Below, in pieces: positions 32,655 through 40,597 of a stretch of 40,597 bases of DNA. Under the pieces are notes generated by a model. The model was not told the DNA's origin. It made no database searches and worked only from the letters and a program-made list of their open reading frames with translations. A program made the translations under genes and the position numbers. The DNA comes from Klebsormidium nitens (lineage: Eukaryota > Plantae > Klebsormidiophyceae): assembly GCA_000708835.1 (NCBI GenBank), contig DF237670.1:1-40597 (forward strand), written 5' to 3'. Each line of letters starts with the position of its first letter. The stretch's first letter is position 1.

Positions 32655-34949
32655 CCTGAGTCTCGCAACTGCGCGGTATTGCTTAGGGCCATTTTGCGGG
32701 TATGCAATTGGTATTGCAAGGCAGTTGGCTTCCAATTGTTGTAATGTAGGACTACCAAACAGGCAGGCTTCGAGATGTGAAGCACTATGATGCCCCGTGT
32801 GAACCTCGAAAACAATAGATACACTGATAGCTGCTGCTAGTTGATTGGATTATGCGAAATGTTGCCTGCAGAATGAAATTCGAGAGTGCTGTCGTGATTG
32901 AATATTGTATGGAACTTACGCGACTCTACTCATGGTACCGTCGGTGCCTTGTGTAGAGGGTCCGGGTGACTATTGATGGGGTGCCTCATTCCATAGCACA
33001 AGCTGCTGGTACAGTTGAAGCAGCATGTCAAGTACTACCACCCTAAGAGTACGGAATCAGTCGAACTTACATCCATGTCATTGGCTGAGGGCGGCCCTAG
33101 CTAGCATATCGACGGGCTAGCTATGTCATGCCAGTATGGATCGAGTCCTAATGGAGTCGAGGCCGATGCGAAACAAGCCATGCTGTCAAAAAAATGTATT
33201 GCAACAAACAAACAATCAGGGATGTCTGCAACTTATGCACCTTATGATTGCAAGCTCTGTGTTGATGCGTCGCAGCGTATGATTACATGCCCCAGCGTTT
33301 ATGTCGTTGTGCAAATACAAGAGCAGCCGTGTGCTGCTCAGGAACCTTATGCTTCGGCACTGGATGAAGATAGGGCAAACAGGTACTGGCACCGGCGCCA
33401 TAGCGCACCCTCTGAGAGTCCCTATAACCAGCAACTTACAAAAGGTTGCAGTAGCAACCTTGCAGTCCAATTAAGATGAGCCCGCAGGTAACTAGACTGG
33501 GCTCAGAACTGTCCGGTTATATGCCTATATGCTCAACATGCAGACCATACGCTATGGGCTCGACTCAGGACCCGCCTAGAGCTCATCGAGCATGACAGCT
33601 AGCTCACCTGGCTCGCAAGCTAAGTTCTATAAATGGCGCCGCGGGCCGGATGGTCCCGGCGACGGCGGGCCTGGCTGCACGGCCGGCTTTCAGCAATGCA
33701 CTGGGCCGCGCCGCGCCACATGACGCAATCTAGCGCCGAATGTAAGGAGCTTTTTGCACTAACATGCGACCGTCAAAGATATTGCTGCATCAGTCAGTGC
33801 ACCGTCGCGTCTGGCTCGCATTCCCAGAGATGGATTGGGTTTGGCATGGGCTAGCTGCGCAGCAACGTCCGTCTGCCTTGTCATGTTGCCGATTAGATGA
33901 TCTGGGTTCGCCAGGCTGCGTGGCCGCTAACAGAGATAACCAGACTATTGAGCGCGGCGGCGGACATCGGCGTCTTCAAAAGAACAGGCGCGATCAACAT
34001 AGTCCGTCATGCCCCCATCGCCACTGAAGACCAACCGCCTACGGCAATGAAAGTGTGGGCGCGGCAACGTACAAGTGAGCGGCACGCGGCGCAGCGCATG
34101 GCCCGCCCGCCCGCACCCAACCGGGTACATCCTGAGCCTGTTCAGATTTTTCTGCGGAAGCCGACGCCAATCTACTCTTGCCAGTACAGGGAGACGACTT
34201 TGGTCTCAATCGAAGGTACAATTGAAAGATCGCCTCGAGGCAGATGGTCCGGTTCAATATCGACCACCAGTTAACTTCGCCTCTCTTCGATCGCGCACTA
34301 CGTCGTTTCCAGACAGTATCACACTTCTGAAACTGTGCATGGGGTTACGTGATCAACGGCCCGATGCACAACACGCGTCAAATTCATATGGGGCAACATT
34401 ATTGGCCCGTTAATTCCAAGCAAATGCTTCTCACCTACAAACTATACAGTGATATGTCCGCTCATTACTGATGCTGACTCTCGACATCCTATCACCTTTG
34501 ATGGAACAATCGTGTTTGCCGAAACTGAACTCACAGGGGATTTTTACATGAAGATAATCGTCAACTTAAAGGCCCTTTTCACTTGGTACACTGGGCCAGC
34601 TACTACTCAAAAACGTCCTGCTGGACACTTGGAGAAGTAGAGTTTTACCGCGGATTCGCTGGTCTTTCGACCGCTTTGAAGCCGCAATCAGACTCCAACC
34701 GCTGGTCAACTCTGTCGACGACAAAACTTTGCTCTGACATCAATTTAGCGCCCAATCTCACACCATCGGATAGTTACTCTTCCTAGCGCTCAAAGACTCT
34801 CGAGCAACAACCAAGACAGGTAGAAAACATTGTTCAAGATATCAAAGCCACCGCACAAGTTTTTGCGCCGTGAACTCCCCTATCTAAGATTACTGATAGA
34901 GGGACATAAATTACTGCTCCCGGTTCTCAACACAGACCGAGTATAACTC

Positions 34950-37900
34950 CTAATCGGCGAGATACCCAACGAGCACAGAATACTTTTTCCCGGTTGCCAA
35001 GCTCTCGGCGGGCTGGATCCACGTGTACTTCAGGGATCCCCTCAGAGTGTAGCTGATCCACGCGGGAATCCCCGCTTGAATCCCGGCAACTAGAGCGGCG
35101 GCCACGTCCGGAGCCTCCGCTTGCTGCAGACACGAAAGGAACCGGGTACACGCTTCGGACCGATCCGAGCAGCTCTTAGAAAGGCAGATTGAACTCAAGA
35201 AAGATAATAAGCCGAGATGAAAACAAGGTAACCAAATTGAAATGGGGGAGTTAGTCTGGTGGTTAGGGTGGGTGTGGGTGCGGAGCAGGTATCTTTTTGG
35301 GTTGAATTTCCTAGTGTTAGGCGAAGCTTATTATCATCTCTGGCTTATTATCATCTTTCTTGAGAAGTATAAAGAGCAGCGCCCTTTCACGTTGCTCAGA
35401 AAAGAAGATCTGAGTCCGCGAGATTTTGGCAGTGAATGAGTGAAACGACGGGAATGTCACGCTCCGGCCACTGAGCGTTGAATGAGTCAGTGGAGCCTCT
35501 TACGTTTTCGAGTCTGCTTACCTCTGGCAAAACCGGGTCAAGGACACTTTATCAGAAACGGCGAGAAAGGGTGGGGCTTTCTTAGTGCTTACGCGTCTCC
35601 CTTGCGACGAGGAGTCACTCGACCCTCATTTGGAAGCCTCGAATCGGACAAGCACATGTACGGCACCGGAACAGAACTTGGAAATTACCTGGAGCGTCTC
35701 GCCGCTTAAAGCTGGAAGGTCTTTCTTGCAACAAATTTAATGTAGATCGAAATGCGGAGGAGCAGACGAATCGGACGGAAGCAGGACAACGAAGACCGGA
35801 ACTTACCTGGGGCGTCTTGGCGGCCTTGGAGAAGTCCGCTCTGTGCGCCATGGAAAGGCCGGATTGGCTTTTGAACCGAGATTTTGAACCACGGAAGGGG
35901 AAAACAACCGGAACGGATCCAAATGGAACTTTTCTGGCGGAGCCTTGGGAGGTTTTGAGAGAAATTTTGCCATGGGAGCGTGCGTCGTGACCCTGACCAG
36001 AGAGGAGCGAAGACAAACCGGAACGGAACCGGAACGGAACTCACCTCAGGTGTCTTGCCGGCCTTGGAGAAGTCCGCCCCGTGCGCCACGGAAACGTAGC
36101 CCGAGGCCGGATCGGCGTCCCGCACAACGACGTAAAAGCCGCCAGGAATTACGCCCGGAAAGACCTGCTTGTTTGTGGCGTCGAACAAGGGCTGCGCTGA
36201 GCCAGGCGCGAACTTGATCTTCTCCCCGAAGTACGTCGCGAGAGTGTAGGCCGCGATGGGGTTGCACGCCGTGTAAGCCGCATAAGTACACTGGGCGATC
36301 TCCGTATAGCCCTGCAGAAGACGGATATAAATTATGGGTCGTTGGATGGGCACCACGTGGCCTTGCGGGATGGAGAATATGGTGGCACGTTTACAGCAAT
36401 GGGTTTGCACGGGTTTGAGTCGCATAAGTGCACTGAGCGATCTCCGTATAGCCCTGCAGAAAAGGGACATACGCTGCTGACAAGGGGCAAAGGGGAGGCG
36501 CTGAGGAATGAAACGGTCATTGGATGGGCGCCACGTGGCCCTACGGGTGGAGAGCATGGTGCCATACTTATGCAGTTGCGAGTGCCCCCAGATGTGTCTG
36601 TAAGGAAAGAGCGCAATGGAGAGCCTTAAAAAGGCAAAGAAGGAGGCTCTTTGGCGACCAGCGAGCGGAGAGACCACGGATTCGGTCGCTCGCCACGTCC
36701 TGCAAACAGAGGGTACACGCGACGTGGCTGCTCCGCGAGTAATGCTCAGATTATCCCGGAGGAAACACCGCGGATGGGTGCTTGTTACTTTGCTTGGACC
36801 TAACCTGAGCGGAAAAACTTCCATTGGAATCAGAAAGACTTCTCCTGACGTACTCCGAACGGCTTGAAATAGGTGACAAACGAGACCGATCGGGCAAGCT
36901 CGCAAGGAGCACTTTACTCAAGTGGGAGACATTCGCTGCCCAAGCTAAACTTCGCACACCCTCTTTGCTCGTGGATTACGTGTCTTGTCCCAAACGAAAG
37001 CTCAAAACACTTGCCTCCTGCAGAGAGCTTCGGAAAACATGTGCTTTTTCAAAATGAGGGCCTCGATAAACAACGAGAGTCGGAAGAACGAGGACTTACA
37101 GAGGCGACGATGGATCCGTCCGGCAGTAGTGGTCCAACGTAGGCCTTCTTGAGAGAGAGAGGATTGCCGTTCCTGAAGAGATATTGGGTCAGCCCCCCCC
37201 CCGCCGCGGCGATCCCCTGGTACACTTGCAGCCTGTTGGGATACGAAGGGATCCCCACGTCTTCGAAAGCCTCGTCGAAGTACATCCCGAGAGAGGACAG
37301 GTTCGCGTGCGCGACGCGGCGCCAACTGGCGCCATTGACGAACGGGTAGAAGCCGTTGAACTGCCACTTAGGGCTCTTGGAATTGATCTCTGCGTAAACC
37401 TGTGCGGGGAGGGTGCGTCGGGCTGTTAATAGTGAATCGAGACCCGTTTTTAAGACCACTTGTCAAAACATGAAGGAAAGGACCCGCGGGGTTCTTGACC
37501 AGTATCAATCTTCAAATGCGTCGGGGTCAGTTCAAGAGCGCTTTTGGGCTTTGATGAAGGGACTTTTCAGTCAGTCTTTGAATTATTTCAAGATCAGTCT
37601 TCATCCGGGTCCTGAGTAACCGCGCGAGGTCAGGGTGCAACGTCACAGAGGTCTGTGTAGGTTTTGCACATCATTCTGTGAACCTTCTGTGAACATTCTG
37701 TAAACCTCTCAGGAAGTGTTCACGTGTCCCAAGTGTTTCTTTCCGAGGTTCTGAAATTTCTTTATAAAATTTACGTGGATGTGAGCCAAAGAATTGATCA
37801 AAGAACCAACTTACAACAAAGCACGTCCCAAGTTGTGAGAAGAATGTACCTTCTTCCTGTATGTTCATGTTGTGATGAGTTCCAAGTTGTGATACGAGAA

Positions 37901-39039
37901 AAGAGAAGCTGACAAGGGCATATGCATGTAACGATACACGGTCCCACCTTCAAGCAACTTCCAATGGGCGCCAGATCCATGACACCAGACGCACGACATC
38001 CTCACAAATGAGAGCTCACCAGACAAACAATGCTACATTCGAAAGATCAATTTGGCTCAGGAAGGGAGGCTTTTTCTTGTATTGTCCCAGCTAACAGCTC
38101 TGTTCCTTCAGACTGCCCGGAAGATTTCGAGCAGCAGAAGACGAGACTTCAAAAGCAGCAAAGACTGCACAATCCAAGCTCTCAACCTGCTCAGCTTACG
38201 TCCTTAGCGTCGGTGCCTGACTGGATCTCCCGAACGACTGCGAGCACCAGGTTTTGGACGGTCGCATATTCGCAGCCAGTTTCTTTGGGAGGGTCCGCAA
38301 TGCACGTTGACTGGGCTTGGGCGCCAATCTGCATTTGGAAAGGAGTTTCAAAGTGGTCAATAGCGGGTCTGATTGGCTAATGCTGCTTCTCTTGTTCTTG
38401 GCATTGTCTTTGATTTCTCAGTGCTTCTGCAGGAATTCTGCGGGCCGGTCCTAAAAGGTTGATGACAGGTGGGGAACAACATAAGCAGCAGCTGCCGGCA
38501 GTGGCGTATCAGTTTTGGAGTCTTTGGACTTTGAATCGCAAATTCAAGACTCACTCAACATGCTTCAGTCATGCCGTTTACTTTGAAGCCGACAGGGCCA
38601 GAATGTGTGAGGACTGCGCAGAAGAATTGGAAAGAGGATTCACATGCCAAAACCAGCTAGCAGAGATAGTTGCAGAGTGGAAGAATTTTGAGAAGCTTCT
38701 TAGATTGAACACACTGTCAAACTTTTCAGTGGGCCGCCAGAGGAGCTCTGCAAGCTGGAAGAAAATCCCATCGTCAATGCAATGGGGCTAATCGCCCAGC
38801 AAGAAACGGAGTATGTGTTTAAATTCTACGCTTATACACTTTAGCAATGTCAAAGCAGCATTGCACGGGCAAGCAGCATTGAATGAGAGACAGAGAGAAG
38901 CAAAGTCAGCAACCAATTTGCACTGGCACAGGAGACATATTGAAGCAGCAGACCCTATTTTGCCGTAGCTCACCAGCACGCATGCGGCCAGTGCCGCGAC
39001 AAGTAAAAGAGCCCAGGCAGGACGGCAAAGCGGCGCCAT
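34950..39039 (-). CDS. Secreted protein of two tandem Cache-like (sCache_2-type) domains, 311 aa, no output domain
   Basis: Exons 39039-38974, 38328-38200, 37399-37100, 36311-36045, 35123-34950; all phase 0 and GT-AG (936 nt). Signal peptide MAPLCRPAWALLLVAALAACVLIGAQA. Repeat 1: VYAEIN...FYPFV...RVAH...AGGG...YLF...LKKAYV...VASGY. Repeat 2: FYVVVRD...VAHG...GK...W-x-SY...KY-x-W...VLVGY. The gene model is strong; the Cache assignment is by motif recognition only. Confidence 0.75.
35191..35367. mobile_element. MITE-like element (~175 bp) in the last intron of the Cache-like gene
   Basis: Left arm CTCAAGAAAGATAATAAGCCGAGATGA is the inverted repeat of the right arm TCATCTCTGGCTTATTATCATCTTTCTTGAG. 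Core GGTGGTTAGGGTGGGTGTGGGTGCGGAGC. Same family as 16172-16344. Confidence 0.7.
35641..36100 (-). repeat. Four tandem copies of the Cache-gene exon 4 3' end plus donor (~114-124 bp period)
   Basis: True donor at 36044 (CCTGAG|GTGAGTTCC). Copies at ~35930 (donor mutated), 35806 (CCCCAG|GTAAGTTCC, preceded by a near-intact AH(G/R)ADFSKA(G/A)KTP codon string) and 35688 (CTCCAG|GTAATTTCC). Confidence 0.85.
36255..36570 (-). repeat. Tandem duplication of the acceptor plus Cache-gene exon 4 5' end
   Basis: TTCTGCAG|GGCTATACGGAGATCGC occurs at 36311 (true) and 36453 (copy). The intronic block TTGGATGGGC-x-CCACGTGGCC is also duplicated (36341-36388 and 36521-36567). Confidence 0.88.
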
Positions 39040-39122
39040 CGTGAAATCTCAGTACGTTATTAGGAATCAGGGATCCTTCTCTCTCCGGAGAAGCGCAGCC
39101 AGACCGATCGACGCTGAATGGT

Positions 39123-39200
39123 GTACGTACTGGGGGGGTACCGTATGGCAAACTGTACAGTGTACGGTACATACTAAGTACAGTGTACACTGCAGTGTAC
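39123..39200. promoter_or_regulatory. GTAC cluster (putative SBP-domain / copper-response element array) upstream of the Cache-like gene
   Basis: Nine GTAC in 78 bp (39123, 39127, 39138, 39155, 39162, 39167, 39178, 39185, 39197), 84-161 bp upstream of the ATG at 39039, plus a tenth at 39052. Includes two TGTACGG, the reverse complement of the SBP site CCGTACA. Confidence 0.7.
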
Positions 39201-40597
39201 GGGGGGGGCAGCTGGCGGCGATCGGCCCGGCAGCCGCCATGTTGTTCGCCAATCATTGAATTAATTGGGCCCCGGCGGGCGGCGGCCGCCGGCCGCGCCC
39301 TTGGCCGCCCGGCCGCAAGCAGGCCGCGCCCGCTTCAGGCCCGCGGGGGCCGCAGCGCTCCGCTCTGCCGCTCGCAGCCCGTTTGATTCCAGAGGAGTGC
39401 AGGGATACGCTTGAGTCGTGAAGGTTATGATCAGTCAGGTTTAAACACTTCAGAAACGTTAAATACCGGTTTGTATCCGGATTTTATCCTCTGCATGTTG
39501 CAATATGCCGTCGCTTGAGTCTCACTGCACTTTTGATTTCCGGCGGCTCAATCATACTGACAGCTGAAATAAGTCGTTTACCAAACGGGCCCCCGCAAAA
39601 AGGCACCAGGACCTATTGAGCCCGGTATCGCGTTTAGCAGAGCGGGTTGCGCGCGTTGTTGCTTTGCTGTCGGTTGCAGAGTCGATCCTCAGAGCCAAGA
39701 ACGCAAACGTCTGTCTCAAGGAACGGCCAGCCGCGGGACTCTGGATTGAAGATCACATTCATGTTTACAAATGAAGATCGGTGCACTCAGGGGCTGTCCA
39801 AGTATTGACGAGATTGTGCGGGCCGCGGAACCCCGTGTTGAACTGCCGATGAGCCTGACGGTGCGACAGAAACGTGAGATTTTTTGGCAACAACACACGA
39901 GACGAGGCAGCAAAGATACCATGGTGGGTCGACTTTCTAAAACTCAGAGGACACTCTGTAGCGCCCACGTAGCGGCGCTTTCTTGATGTAACGAAGTGAA
40001 ATTCAATATGTCTTGCACGATCAGAATGAGGCTTTGCCTCTCACACGATAAGGGCAGTACAGCAAACCAGTACTGGTCACGTCTACGAAGTATACCAGAA
40101 CGAGTTTCAGGTAACTGGAAAATTGACCCGGCTGTTCCCGTGTTCCGGGGCTGCTTGACGCCCAAATCTGATCATAAGTTGGACATATAACCACTCTCTA
40201 ACCAGCCCATAACCAGCGCATATAACCATCCATTATGACTAAGGGCCAAAAACTCCGGTGTATCTCCATGCGCAAGCTCGTCCCGGGCTTGCGGGATTCG
40301 TGGGGTATCGTACCCTCTCCTCACTTCAGACCGATTCGTGATGTGATTGGGTCATAAAACTGTATACTCGTAGTTCAAGAGGGAGACGGAGATAGAGGGC
40401 AACCTGCAGGTGTAAAGACGTGAAGCGCATACCAGCTCTTTCAGTAAGGCCAAAGGCTAACCGTCCCAGAACGAGACGACCCCGCAAATTATACAGAGGA
40501 ACCTCAAAGGCGATACTATTGACGAGCAACGAGAATGGAGTCGGGGGAGAAGCATTTGCGCGTTCTCATGAACACTTTCGTGAGCCCTCATCAGCCG

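What the first reader, a model, noticed from the sequence alone, without database searches (positions are those of the whole stretch)
34950..39039. Secreted, output-less tandem Cache-like sensor protein encoded by a spliced algal gene
Seen: a clean five-exon gene with a signal peptide, two internal repeats each led by a Cys pair (C-x9-C and C-x7-C), and a stop right after repeat 2, with no transmembrane helix or signalling domain. Known: sCache_2 domains are mainly bacterial periplasmic sensors of short-chain carboxylates and are normally fused to MCP, kinase or GGDEF outputs; the Y/F...H...Y...K pocket pattern appears retained in both repeats. Inference: a bacterial-derived sensor domain turned into a free extracellular ligand-binding or scavenging protein, possibly through horizontal transfer followed by intron gain.
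Basis: partly seen in the sequence, partly recalled or inferred. Interest (0 to 1): 0.82.

Follow-up and report, generated by a model that had tools for sequence, protein, structure and literature searches.

The report
Secreted two-module Cache protein of Klebsormidium
A transcribed, five-exon gene of the streptophyte alga Klebsormidium nitens encodes a secretion-signal-bearing protein made only of two bacterial-style "single Cache" ligand-binding modules, with the carboxylate-binding residues kept and no membrane anchor or signalling part, an arrangement not described for the plant lineage.

Summary
The minus-strand gene 39039..34950 has five exons, all phase 0 with GT-AG introns, and encodes 311 aa. 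This equals the database record KFL_007210060 of Klebsormidium nitens, listed as hypothetical. Transcript contigs from four studies carry all four junctions. They run unspliced about 570 nt past the stop, so no further 3' exon adds a TM or output domain.

Pfam finds no Cache domain in this protein. The fold evidence is nevertheless clear:
- Module A (about residues 34-170) is closest to the solved sCache_2 structures 4K08, TlpB, PscD and 2QHK (VIA Z 12.8).
- Module B (about 176-311) matches Cache/PDC domains (Z 10-12).
- A distant three-module relative reaches Pfam sCache_2 at 51 bits and links to module A at E 4e-12.

The PscD carboxylate tetrad Tyr/His/Tyr/Lys aligns with Y83/H96/Y138/K149. 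Module B has Y225/H242/Y279/K286 at the matching positions.

An orthologue gives dN/dS 0.10. All four intron positions are shared with two four-module paralogues.

No close bacterial relative was found, so recent horizontal transfer is not supported and an ancient bacterial origin stays an inference. Ligand and function are untested. The scan had already reported the four-module paralogues elsewhere in this genome.

The parts
39123..39200 (.). Promoter-proximal cluster of nine GTAC words, 84-161 nt upstream of the ATG
Evidence: one search lists nine GTAC at 39123-39200.
38974..39039 (-). Exon 1: ATG plus 22 codons, the bulk of the signal peptide (Arg6, hydrophobic core 8-24)
   Evidence: The junction 38974|38328 stands in four runs.
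38329..38973 (-). Intron 1 (645 nt, GT..AG, phase 0)
38200..38328 (-). Exon 2: end of the signal peptide (AQA|Q), the Cys31-x9-Cys41 pair and the long N-terminal helix of module A
37400..38199 (-). Intron 2 (800 nt, GT..AG, phase 0)
37100..37399 (-). Exon 3: core of module A (the beta sheet, with Y83, F85, H96, Y138, F140, K149)
36312..37099 (-). Intron 3 (788 nt), placed exactly at the module A | module B boundary. It holds an 86% echo copy of the exon 4 acceptor region at 36413-36471.
36045..36311 (-). Exon 4: Cys173-x7-Cys181, the N-terminal helices and strands 1-2 of module B (Y225, H242)
35124..36044 (-). Intron 4 (921 nt). It holds an 86% echo copy of the exon 4 end plus donor at 35794-35856.
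34950..35123 (-). Exon 5 coding part: strands 3-5 of module B (Y279, K286), then TAG at 34952..34950
34380..34949 (-). Unspliced 3' UTR of about 570 nt. The spliced contigs end at 34380-34394 (34430 for the X1 piece).
   Evidence: table 8

Best explanation
KFL_007210060 is an expressed nuclear gene of Klebsormidium nitens under purifying selection. Its product enters the secretory pathway through a cleavable N-terminal signal peptide. The released protein of about 284 residues consists only of two tandem single-Cache (sCache_2-like) modules, each preceded by a probably disulfide-bonded Cys pair. Each module keeps the Tyr/His/Tyr/Lys tetrad that holds the carboxyl group of acetate, glycolate, propionate or pyruvate in the bacterial chemoreceptor domain PscD. 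The most likely activity is therefore binding of small carboxylates, or similar small polar ligands, in the cell wall or extracellular space. With no transmembrane helix or output domain, it would act as a soluble binding protein. It could hand its ligand state to a membrane partner, as bacterial periplasmic binding proteins do, or it could buffer or capture the ligand. Shown: gene structure, transcription, architecture, fold, residue conservation and selection. Inferred: signal-peptide cleavage, the disulfides, the ligand class and any downstream partner.
For: Gene model and mRNA. Identity with KFL_007210060 of K. nitens. Fold, whole protein: AF2 pLDDT 79, pTM 0.75, with each module built as helix-helix-2 strands-2 helices-3 strands. 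Fold, module A alone: pLDDT 89, pTM 0.85. Structure searches: VIA gives module A vs 4K08 Z 12.8 (127 of 144 residues, 20% identity) and module B vs 3LI8, 4ZR7, 3LIF, 6MNI, WalK, TlpB and CitA Z 10-12.4. Foldseek on module A puts 4K08, TlpB, PscD and 2QHK/4EXO on top at TM 0.5-0.58. Foldseek on the whole model returns Cache ligand-binding domains with E down to 1e-7. Sequence bridge: exon 3 hits P0004 at E 2.6e-8 library-wide. P0004 hits Pfam sCache_2 at 51 bits and dCache_2 at 47.5 bits. hhalign gives A vs P0004 modules 97.6% (E 4e-12) and B vs P0004 modules 76% (E 2e-5). The Atlas language-model search gives 0.94 with 200 shared features to bacterial sCache_2/dCache_2 clusters. Pocket: the profile alignment puts Y83, H96, Y138 and K149 on PscD Tyr90, His103, Tyr143 and Lys156, and F85 and F140 on Trp92 and Trp145 (residues from PMC5062169). 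Y83, Y138 and K149 are invariant in 8 of 8 modules. Y225, Y279 and K286 are invariant in 5 of 5 B modules. Selection: dN/dS 0.10 at dS 0.71 over 225 codons, with introns unalignable and splice sites kept. No TM or output.
Against: No Pfam or NCBIfam Cache model hits this protein. The PDB sequence hits to PscD and 4K08 are the top two but only at E 0.23. The pocket of module B is placed by secondary-structure register, not by a significant alignment, and the hhalign register around K286 differs by three residues. In module B the two ligand-sandwiching aromatic residues are replaced by V227 and L281. His is lost in some paralogue modules. No signal-peptide predictor was available, so an uncleaved signal anchor is not excluded. 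Nothing here shows ligand binding. A shared fold does not give a function.
Confidence: 0.65

Rival explanations
1. The N-terminal hydrophobic segment is an uncleaved signal anchor. The protein would then be a type II membrane protein that displays two Cache modules outside the cell with only about 6 cytosolic residues, and would signal by lateral contact with another membrane protein.
For: The single hydrophobic segment 4-26 scores KD 2.3, as high as a TM helix. No cleavage predictor could be run. The AF2 model draws residues 9-23 as a helix.
Against: The segment has the build of a signal peptide: a short basic n-region (Arg6), a 16-17 residue core, and the small-x-small site A25-Q26-A27 before Q28. 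The paralogues have the same build ending in QAQ or QSQ. The Cys pair starts only 4 residues after the proposed site.
Confidence: 0.15
2. The Cache fold is kept, but the protein no longer senses small molecules. It would be a structural or protein-binding cell-wall component, or a decoy, that uses PAS-like modules as scaffolds.
For: Ligand binding is untested. Some paralogue modules lost the His. Module B lacks the aromatic sandwich. Stand-alone bacterial Cache proteins with non-sensor roles have been described (10.64898/2026.02.01.703092).
Against: Tyr, Tyr and Lys of the carboxylate tetrad are invariant in every module of the family, including the distant P0004. The tetrad residues that the orthologous contig covers (all four of module A; Y225 and H242 of module B) are unchanged at dS 0.71.
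Confidence: 0.2
3. The gene is a recent horizontal acquisition from bacteria, or bacterial contamination of the assembly, that later gained introns.
For: sCache_2 is overwhelmingly bacterial, and published work attributes eukaryotic Cache domains to transfer (PMC4822843). The nearest Atlas clusters are bacterial, and two of them (334 and 282 aa) list no output family.
Against: There is no bacterial hit at E<=0.001 for the module A core among 1.84 billion representatives. None appears in 185,579 species genomes or in JGI metagenomes by pattern plus tblastn. Four spliceosomal introns are confirmed by RNA. All four intron positions are shared with both halves of two paralogues that are only 44-55% identical, and with an orthologue at dS 0.71.
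Confidence: 0.05

Closest known systems
sCache_2 (Pfam PF17200) sensor domains of bacterial chemoreceptors: PscD-SD (5G4Y/5G4Z), Adeh_3718 (4K08), V. parahaemolyticus MCP (2QHK/4EXO), TlpB (3UB6)
   Same: Same fold and topology, with a long N-terminal helix and a five-stranded PAS-like sheet. These are the top structural matches of module A. The carboxylate-binding Tyr/His/Tyr/Lys tetrad is kept at aligned positions.
   Different: Sequence identity is only 14-21%, and the Pfam model does not reach this protein. The bacterial domains sit between two TM helices and are fused to MCP, kinase or GGDEF outputs. This protein has a signal peptide, two modules in tandem, Cys pairs ahead of each module, spliceosomal introns and no output.
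dCache_2 (PF08269) and output-less bacterial 'cache domain-containing proteins' of about 280-335 aa seen as ESM Atlas clusters
   Same: Both have two sCache_2-like modules in one chain. dCache_2 is described as an sCache_2 duplication (PMC4822843). The Atlas structure match has TM 0.52 over 241 residues, and clusters of similar length list no output family.
   Different: No sequence-level hit links P0002 to PF08269. Each algal module has its own N-terminal helix and Cys pair. Those bacterial clusters could not be fetched or aligned here, so homology of the whole two-module unit is untested.
Cache-superfamily sensors known in the plant lineage and in animals: the CHASE domain of cytokinin receptor AHK4 (3T4J), alpha2-delta calcium-channel subunits, CACHD1
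   Same: These are extracellular Cache-type folds in eukaryotes. 3T4J, 8S7C and 8X90 appear among the structural matches at Z 8-10.
   Different: Those are parts of histidine kinases or large membrane-attached proteins. [quoted passage not shown] This one is a free secreted protein of the sCache_2 type.
K. nitens paralogues KFL_000610080 (608 aa) and KFL_000580250 (713 aa), reported earlier by this scan as four-module secreted Cache proteins
   Same: They use the same A-B unit at 44-55% identity, with the same signal peptide, Cys pairs, pocket residues and intron positions.
   Different: They carry the A-B unit twice (A-B-A-B). This gene is the single-unit, minimal form of the family.

Membership tests
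Pfam sCache_2 (PF17200) | Score at or above the family's gathering threshold (25 bits) | tested here: not met
   P0002 has no Cache hit at E<=1, whether full length or exon by exon. Paralogue P0003 scores 16.6 bits. Only the distant relative P0004 passes, at 51.3 bits.
Pfam sCache_2 (PF17200) | Single Cache fold: a long N-terminal helix followed by a PAS-like sheet, closest to 2QHK, 3UB6 and 4K08 | tested here: met
   Module A vs 4K08 gives Z 12.8, rmsd 3.2 and 127 residues aligned; 4EXO gives Z 10.9. Foldseek's top hits are 4K08, 3UB6-9, 5G4Y and 2QHK at TM 0.5-0.58. Module B matches 3UB6 at Z 10.6 and other Cache/PDC domains at Z 10-12.4.
Pfam sCache_2 (PF17200) | Carboxylate-binding residues (PscD Tyr90, His103, Tyr143, Lys156) | tested here: met
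   In module A, Y83, H96, Y138 and K149 align to them (that hit has E 0.23, so the alignment is supported mainly by the structural match). In module B, Y225, H242, Y279 and K286 are placed by strand register only, which is inconclusive on its own.
Pfam sCache_2 (PF17200) | Usual context: an extracytoplasmic loop between two TM helices, fused to an MCP, HK or GGDEF output | tested here: not met
   There is one N-terminal hydrophobic segment only. The mRNA ends about 570 nt after the stop with no further exon.
Cache superfamily (homology, not only fold) | A statistically supported sequence link to a recognised member | tested here: met
   Exon 3 hits P0004 at E 2.6e-8. hhalign gives A vs P0004 modules 97.6% with E 4e-12. 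P0004 hits sCache_2 at E 1.6e-13. Module B is weaker, at 76% and E 2e-5.
Pfam dCache_2 (PF08269) | HMM score above threshold, and a two-module arrangement like bacterial dCache_2 | tested here: inconclusive
   P0002 has no HMM hit. The Atlas structural match to a dCache_2 cluster has TM 0.52 over 241 residues.
Secreted protein (classical signal peptide) | n-h-c build with a small-x-small cleavage site, and no other membrane segment or retention signal | tested here: inconclusive
   By inspection and hydropathy: Arg6, core 8-24, A25-Q26-A27|Q28, no second hydrophobic segment, and a C-terminus ...GYLAD with no KDEL and no GPI-type tail. No trained predictor was available.
Bacterium-to-alga horizontal transfer | A nearest relative in bacteria with the algal sequences nested among them | tested here: not met
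   No bacterial relative is detectable by sequence, so no tree could be built.
Small-carboxylate binding protein | Measured ligand binding | not testable with these tools
   Needs purified protein.

The most novel reading that the evidence does not exclude
Klebsormidium has a family of free extracellular Cache proteins (one A-B unit here, two in the paralogues) that bind photorespiratory or microbial organic acids such as glycolate or acetate outside the cell and report this to membrane receptors. The alga is reported to have 67 histidine kinases. This would be a eukaryotic counterpart of bacterial binding-protein-dependent sensing in the lineage leading to land plants.
Probability: 0.15. Interest if true: 0.8.

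Novelty: new variant of a known kind. Interest (0 to 1): 0.58.

Why it matters
Cache domains are the commonest extracellular sensors of bacteria. The cited preprint puts more than 90% of them in fusions with signalling outputs. In plants and fungi they have been reported only inside histidine kinases.

This gene shows a streptophyte alga keeping, under strong purifying selection, a soluble secreted protein made of nothing but two sCache_2-like modules with an intact carboxylate pocket. It is the minimal member of a small Klebsormidium family.

If it binds organic acids, it would give a simple, expressible handle on how an early-diverging relative of land plants reads or captures small metabolites outside the cell. 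It also shows that standard domain scans miss the family entirely, since databases call it hypothetical.

Tried and rejected
- Pfam and NCBIfam on single exons and on the full database protein gave no Cache hit.
- phmmer or profile searches of exons and modules against PDB sequences gave nothing significant. The best profile put PscD and 4K08 on top, but at E 0.23.
- BLASTP between exons found no internal repeat.
- The word-index protein search found only the protein itself and K. nitens paralogues. Its length window limits it.
- Pattern plus tblastn scans of GTDB species genomes and of JGI metagenomes, using both the Klebsormidium profile and the P0004 profile, gave no confirmed relative. These scans depend on one or two short patterns, so they are weak evidence of absence.
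- Hits P0005, P0006 and P0007 were set aside. P0007 is a beta-propeller repeat protein, P0006 is a repetitive protein with only scattered unrelated Pfam hits, and P0005 is a 2,969-aa protein without Pfam domains.
- The source organism of P0004 could not be named.
- A heme-Cache reading was rejected, because there is no CXXCH motif.
- A GPI anchor, ER retention and a chloroplast transit peptide were rejected by inspection of the termini.
- A homodimer or partner prediction was not attempted, because no binding claim is made.
Exons were searched by reference. The full-length sequence entered tools only as database record P0002, returned. dN/dS was computed exon by exon and only the counts were summed.
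Full report
**1. What is in the sequence**

On the minus strand an ORF opens at ATG 39039, the first start after an in-frame stop. Five exons follow: 39039..38974, 38328..38200, 37399..37100, 36311..36045 and 35123..34950. Every intron is GT..AG and in phase 0.

The exhaustive representative search with exon 3 returned a 311-aa database protein, P0002, in which exon 3 is residues 66-165. The five exon translations tile that record without gap or overlap. The record is KFL_007210060, 'hypothetical protein', of Klebsormidium nitens, and its contig is 40,597 nt long, so the window is the whole scaffold. From then on the full-length protein was used only as that record.

**2. Transcription and the 3' end**

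I laid contigs from four runs of four studies on 33350-39300. Three of the runs (X3, X6, X10) each give a long spliced contig of about 1.4-1.5 kb, identical to the window, and these three contigs join 35123|36045, 36311|37100 and 37399|38200. The fourth junction, 38328|38974, is carried by the long contigs of X3 and X10 and by shorter contigs in X6. In X1 all four junctions stand in shorter contigs. Exon contigs have 10-40 times the depth of intron contigs. Contigs lacking the introns can only come from spliced RNA.

The contigs continue unspliced from exon 5 to about 34380-34394 (34430 for the X1 piece). The TAG at 34952..34950 is therefore the real stop, followed by a 3' UTR of about 570 nt. 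One rare alternative donor, 13 nt into intron 2, appears in one run at about 1% of the depth. It would shift the frame.

**3. Protein features**

The only strongly hydrophobic window is residues 4-26 (KD 2.3). The next best scores 1.45 at 261-279 and is a helix plus strand inside the confidently folded module B. The N-terminus has the build of a signal peptide: Arg6, a hydrophobic core at 8-24, and A25-Q26-A27 before Q28. The paralogues share this build. Cleavage is inferred, because no predictor was available.

The C-terminus (...GYLAD) has no hydrophobic tail and no retention motif. Cysteines outside the signal peptide are C31/C41 (C-x9-C) and C173/C181 (C-x7-C), each just ahead of the first helix of a module.

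**4. Is it Cache?**

By standard domain scans it is not. No Pfam or NCBIfam Cache model hits the exons or the whole protein, even at E<=1. No PDB sequence matches single exons. The two halves are also not detectable as repeats by BLASTP.

Three other lines of evidence agree that both halves are Cache modules.

(a) Sequence bridge.
- Exon 3 hits a 497-aa protein, P0004, from a public run assembly at E 2.6e-8 library-wide.
- P0004 has three modules, each led by a C-x7-C pair.
- P0004 scores 51 bits on sCache_2 and 47.5 bits on dCache_2, both above threshold.
- Profile comparison gives module A vs P0004 modules 97.6% (E 4e-12), module B vs P0004 modules 76% (E 2e-5), and A vs B only 8.5% (E 0.004), though in the equivalent register.

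(b) Structure.
- The AF2 model of the whole protein has pLDDT 79 and pTM 0.75. It shows helix-helix-two strands-two helices-three strands twice.
- An all-against-representatives structural search puts 4K08 (Adeh_3718, sCache_2) first for residues 34-170: Z 12.8, rmsd 3.2, 127 of 144 residues, 20% identity. 4EXO follows at Z 10.9.
- The same search gives a run of Cache/PDC sensor domains for residues 176-311: 3LI8 at 12.4, then 4ZR7, 3LIF, PscC 6MNI, WalK, TlpB and CitA at Z 10-11.4. This is well above the Z 7-8 background that the tool quotes.
- Module A modelled alone has pLDDT 89 and pTM 0.85. Its top Foldseek hits are 4K08, TlpB 3UB6-9, PscD 5G4Y and 2QHK/4EXO.
- 2QHK, 3UB6 and 4K08 are exactly the structures listed for sCache_2 in the paper that defined the family.

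(c) Language-model and Atlas search. This gave 0.94 with 200 shared features to bacterial sCache_2/dCache_2 clusters, and a structural TM of 0.52 over 241 residues to a dCache_2 cluster.

**5. The pocket**

In PscD the ligand's carboxyl group is held by Tyr90, His103, Tyr143 and Lys156 and is sandwiched by Trp92 and Trp145. Three of these residues are conserved across the sCache_2 seed (PMC5062169).

A profile of eight A-type modules finds PscD and 4K08 as the two best of 177,635 PDB sequences, though only at E 0.23. The printed alignment puts Y83, H96, Y138 and K149 on the four hydrogen-bonding residues, and F85 and F140 on the two tryptophans. Y83, Y138 and K149 are invariant in all eight modules, and His is present in six.

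In module B the corresponding residues are Y225 (start of strand 1), H242 (end of strand 2), Y279 (strand 3) and K286 (third residue of strand 4, cross-strand from Y279, as K156 is from Y143). This placement rests on the model's strand register, not on a significant alignment. Y225, Y279 and K286 are invariant in the five B modules. The sandwiching positions are aliphatic here (V227, L281), so the ligand of module B may differ.

**6. Family, age and selection**

Two K. nitens paralogues exist: KFL_000610080 (608 aa) and KFL_000580250 (713 aa). Each carries the A-B unit twice, at 44-55% identity to this protein. This gene is therefore the single-unit form of the family.

All four intron positions of this gene recur at the homologous residues in the paralogue units wherever the tblastn pieces marked an exon boundary: the signal-peptide intron in the first exon of both paralogues, and each of the other three positions in two to four of the four A-B units. 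The introns thus predate the duplications.

A contig from another run (SRR23617307) carries an orthologue. Its exons 2-4 are 83-85% identical in DNA, its introns are unalignable and its splice sites are kept. Summed over 225 codons, dS is 0.71, dN is 0.072 and dN/dS is 0.10. The tetrad residues that the contig covers (all four of module A, and Y225 and H242 of module B) are unchanged; the contig ends before Y279 and K286. The gene is under strong purifying selection.

**7. Origin**

The exhaustive search with the module A core found no bacterial protein at E<=0.001. The only true hits are K. nitens proteins, the orthologous fragment and P0004. Pattern plus tblastn scans of 185,579 prokaryotic species genomes and of JGI metagenomes confirmed nothing, although these scans are weak tests.

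A recent transfer, or contamination, is therefore not supported. An ancient bacterial origin is plausible only because the superfamily is bacterial and published work ascribes eukaryotic Cache domains to transfer.

The Atlas lists bacterial clusters of 282 and 334 aa that carry only sCache_2/dCache_2 families. If those are truly output-less, loss of the output need not have happened in the alga. I could not fetch them to test this.

**8. Mechanism and rivals**

Best reading: a secreted two-pocket binding protein for small carboxylates or similar ligands. It would act either as a soluble partner of a membrane receptor or transporter, or as a capture or buffer protein.
- Architecture and fold: confidence about 0.85.
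- Carboxylate binding: about 0.5.
- Any specific downstream route: low.

Rivals:
- an uncleaved signal anchor (0.15);
- a scaffold role without small-molecule binding (0.2);
- recent horizontal transfer (0.05).

**9. Comparison and novelty**

The protein works like, and is homologous to, sCache_2 domains. It fails the Pfam threshold and lacks the defining receptor context (TM helices plus an output domain). Stand-alone Cache proteins are known in bacteria, for example the heme-binding subfamily, while a recent preprint puts more than 90% of Cache domains in fusions with outputs. In plants and fungi Cache has been reported only in histidine kinases.

I rate it a new variant of a known kind. The scan had already reported the four-module paralogues on other scaffolds of this genome. 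This locus adds:
- the minimal single-unit member;
- RNA proof of the whole gene model;
- the residue-level pocket match;
- the shared intron positions;
- the selection test.

Noticed in passing
window 36413-36471 and 36515-36547 (intron 3); 35794-35856 (intron 4): Both edges of exon 4 have 86-88% 'echo' copies inside the flanking introns. The acceptor plus the first ~45 nt of the exon is repeated 142 nt upstream. The last ~50 nt plus the donor is repeated 238 nt downstream. Use of the upstream echo would run into a stop. The spliced contigs do not use either copy. The echoes are absent from the orthologous contig L004 and from the equivalent exon of paralogue locus L003.
   Followed up: partly
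window 39123-39200: Nine GTAC words lie in 78 nt, 84-161 nt upstream of the ATG. The window as a whole has 139 GTAC against 81 expected. This is already the subject of another finding.
   Followed up: partly
window 38187-38199: One run shows a rare alternative donor 13 nt into intron 2 (depth 3 against 270). It would shift the reading frame.
   Followed up: no
window 37193-37202: A run of ten G (minus strand) lies inside exon 3 and encodes the invariant GGG just before strand 3 of module A. This is a slippage-prone homopolymer in a conserved coding position.
   Followed up: no
window 39226-39370: A very GC-rich tract of GCC/GGC-type repeats lies just upstream of the GTAC cluster.
   Followed up: no
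L001 1613-3106 (run SRR20217180): An intronless 497-aa gene encodes three sCache_2 modules, each led by C-x7-C, with an N-terminal hydrophobic segment and no output domain. It sits next to a WWE-PARP gene, and the organism is unknown. It is the only relative outside Klebsormidium that was found.
   Followed up: partly
L002 (KFL_000610080) and L003 (KFL_000580250): In KFL_000610080 the second A-B unit lacks about 20 residues at the A|B junction, including the first Cys of the pair. KFL_000580250 has an extra last exon encoding a 105-aa low-complexity tail.
   Followed up: no
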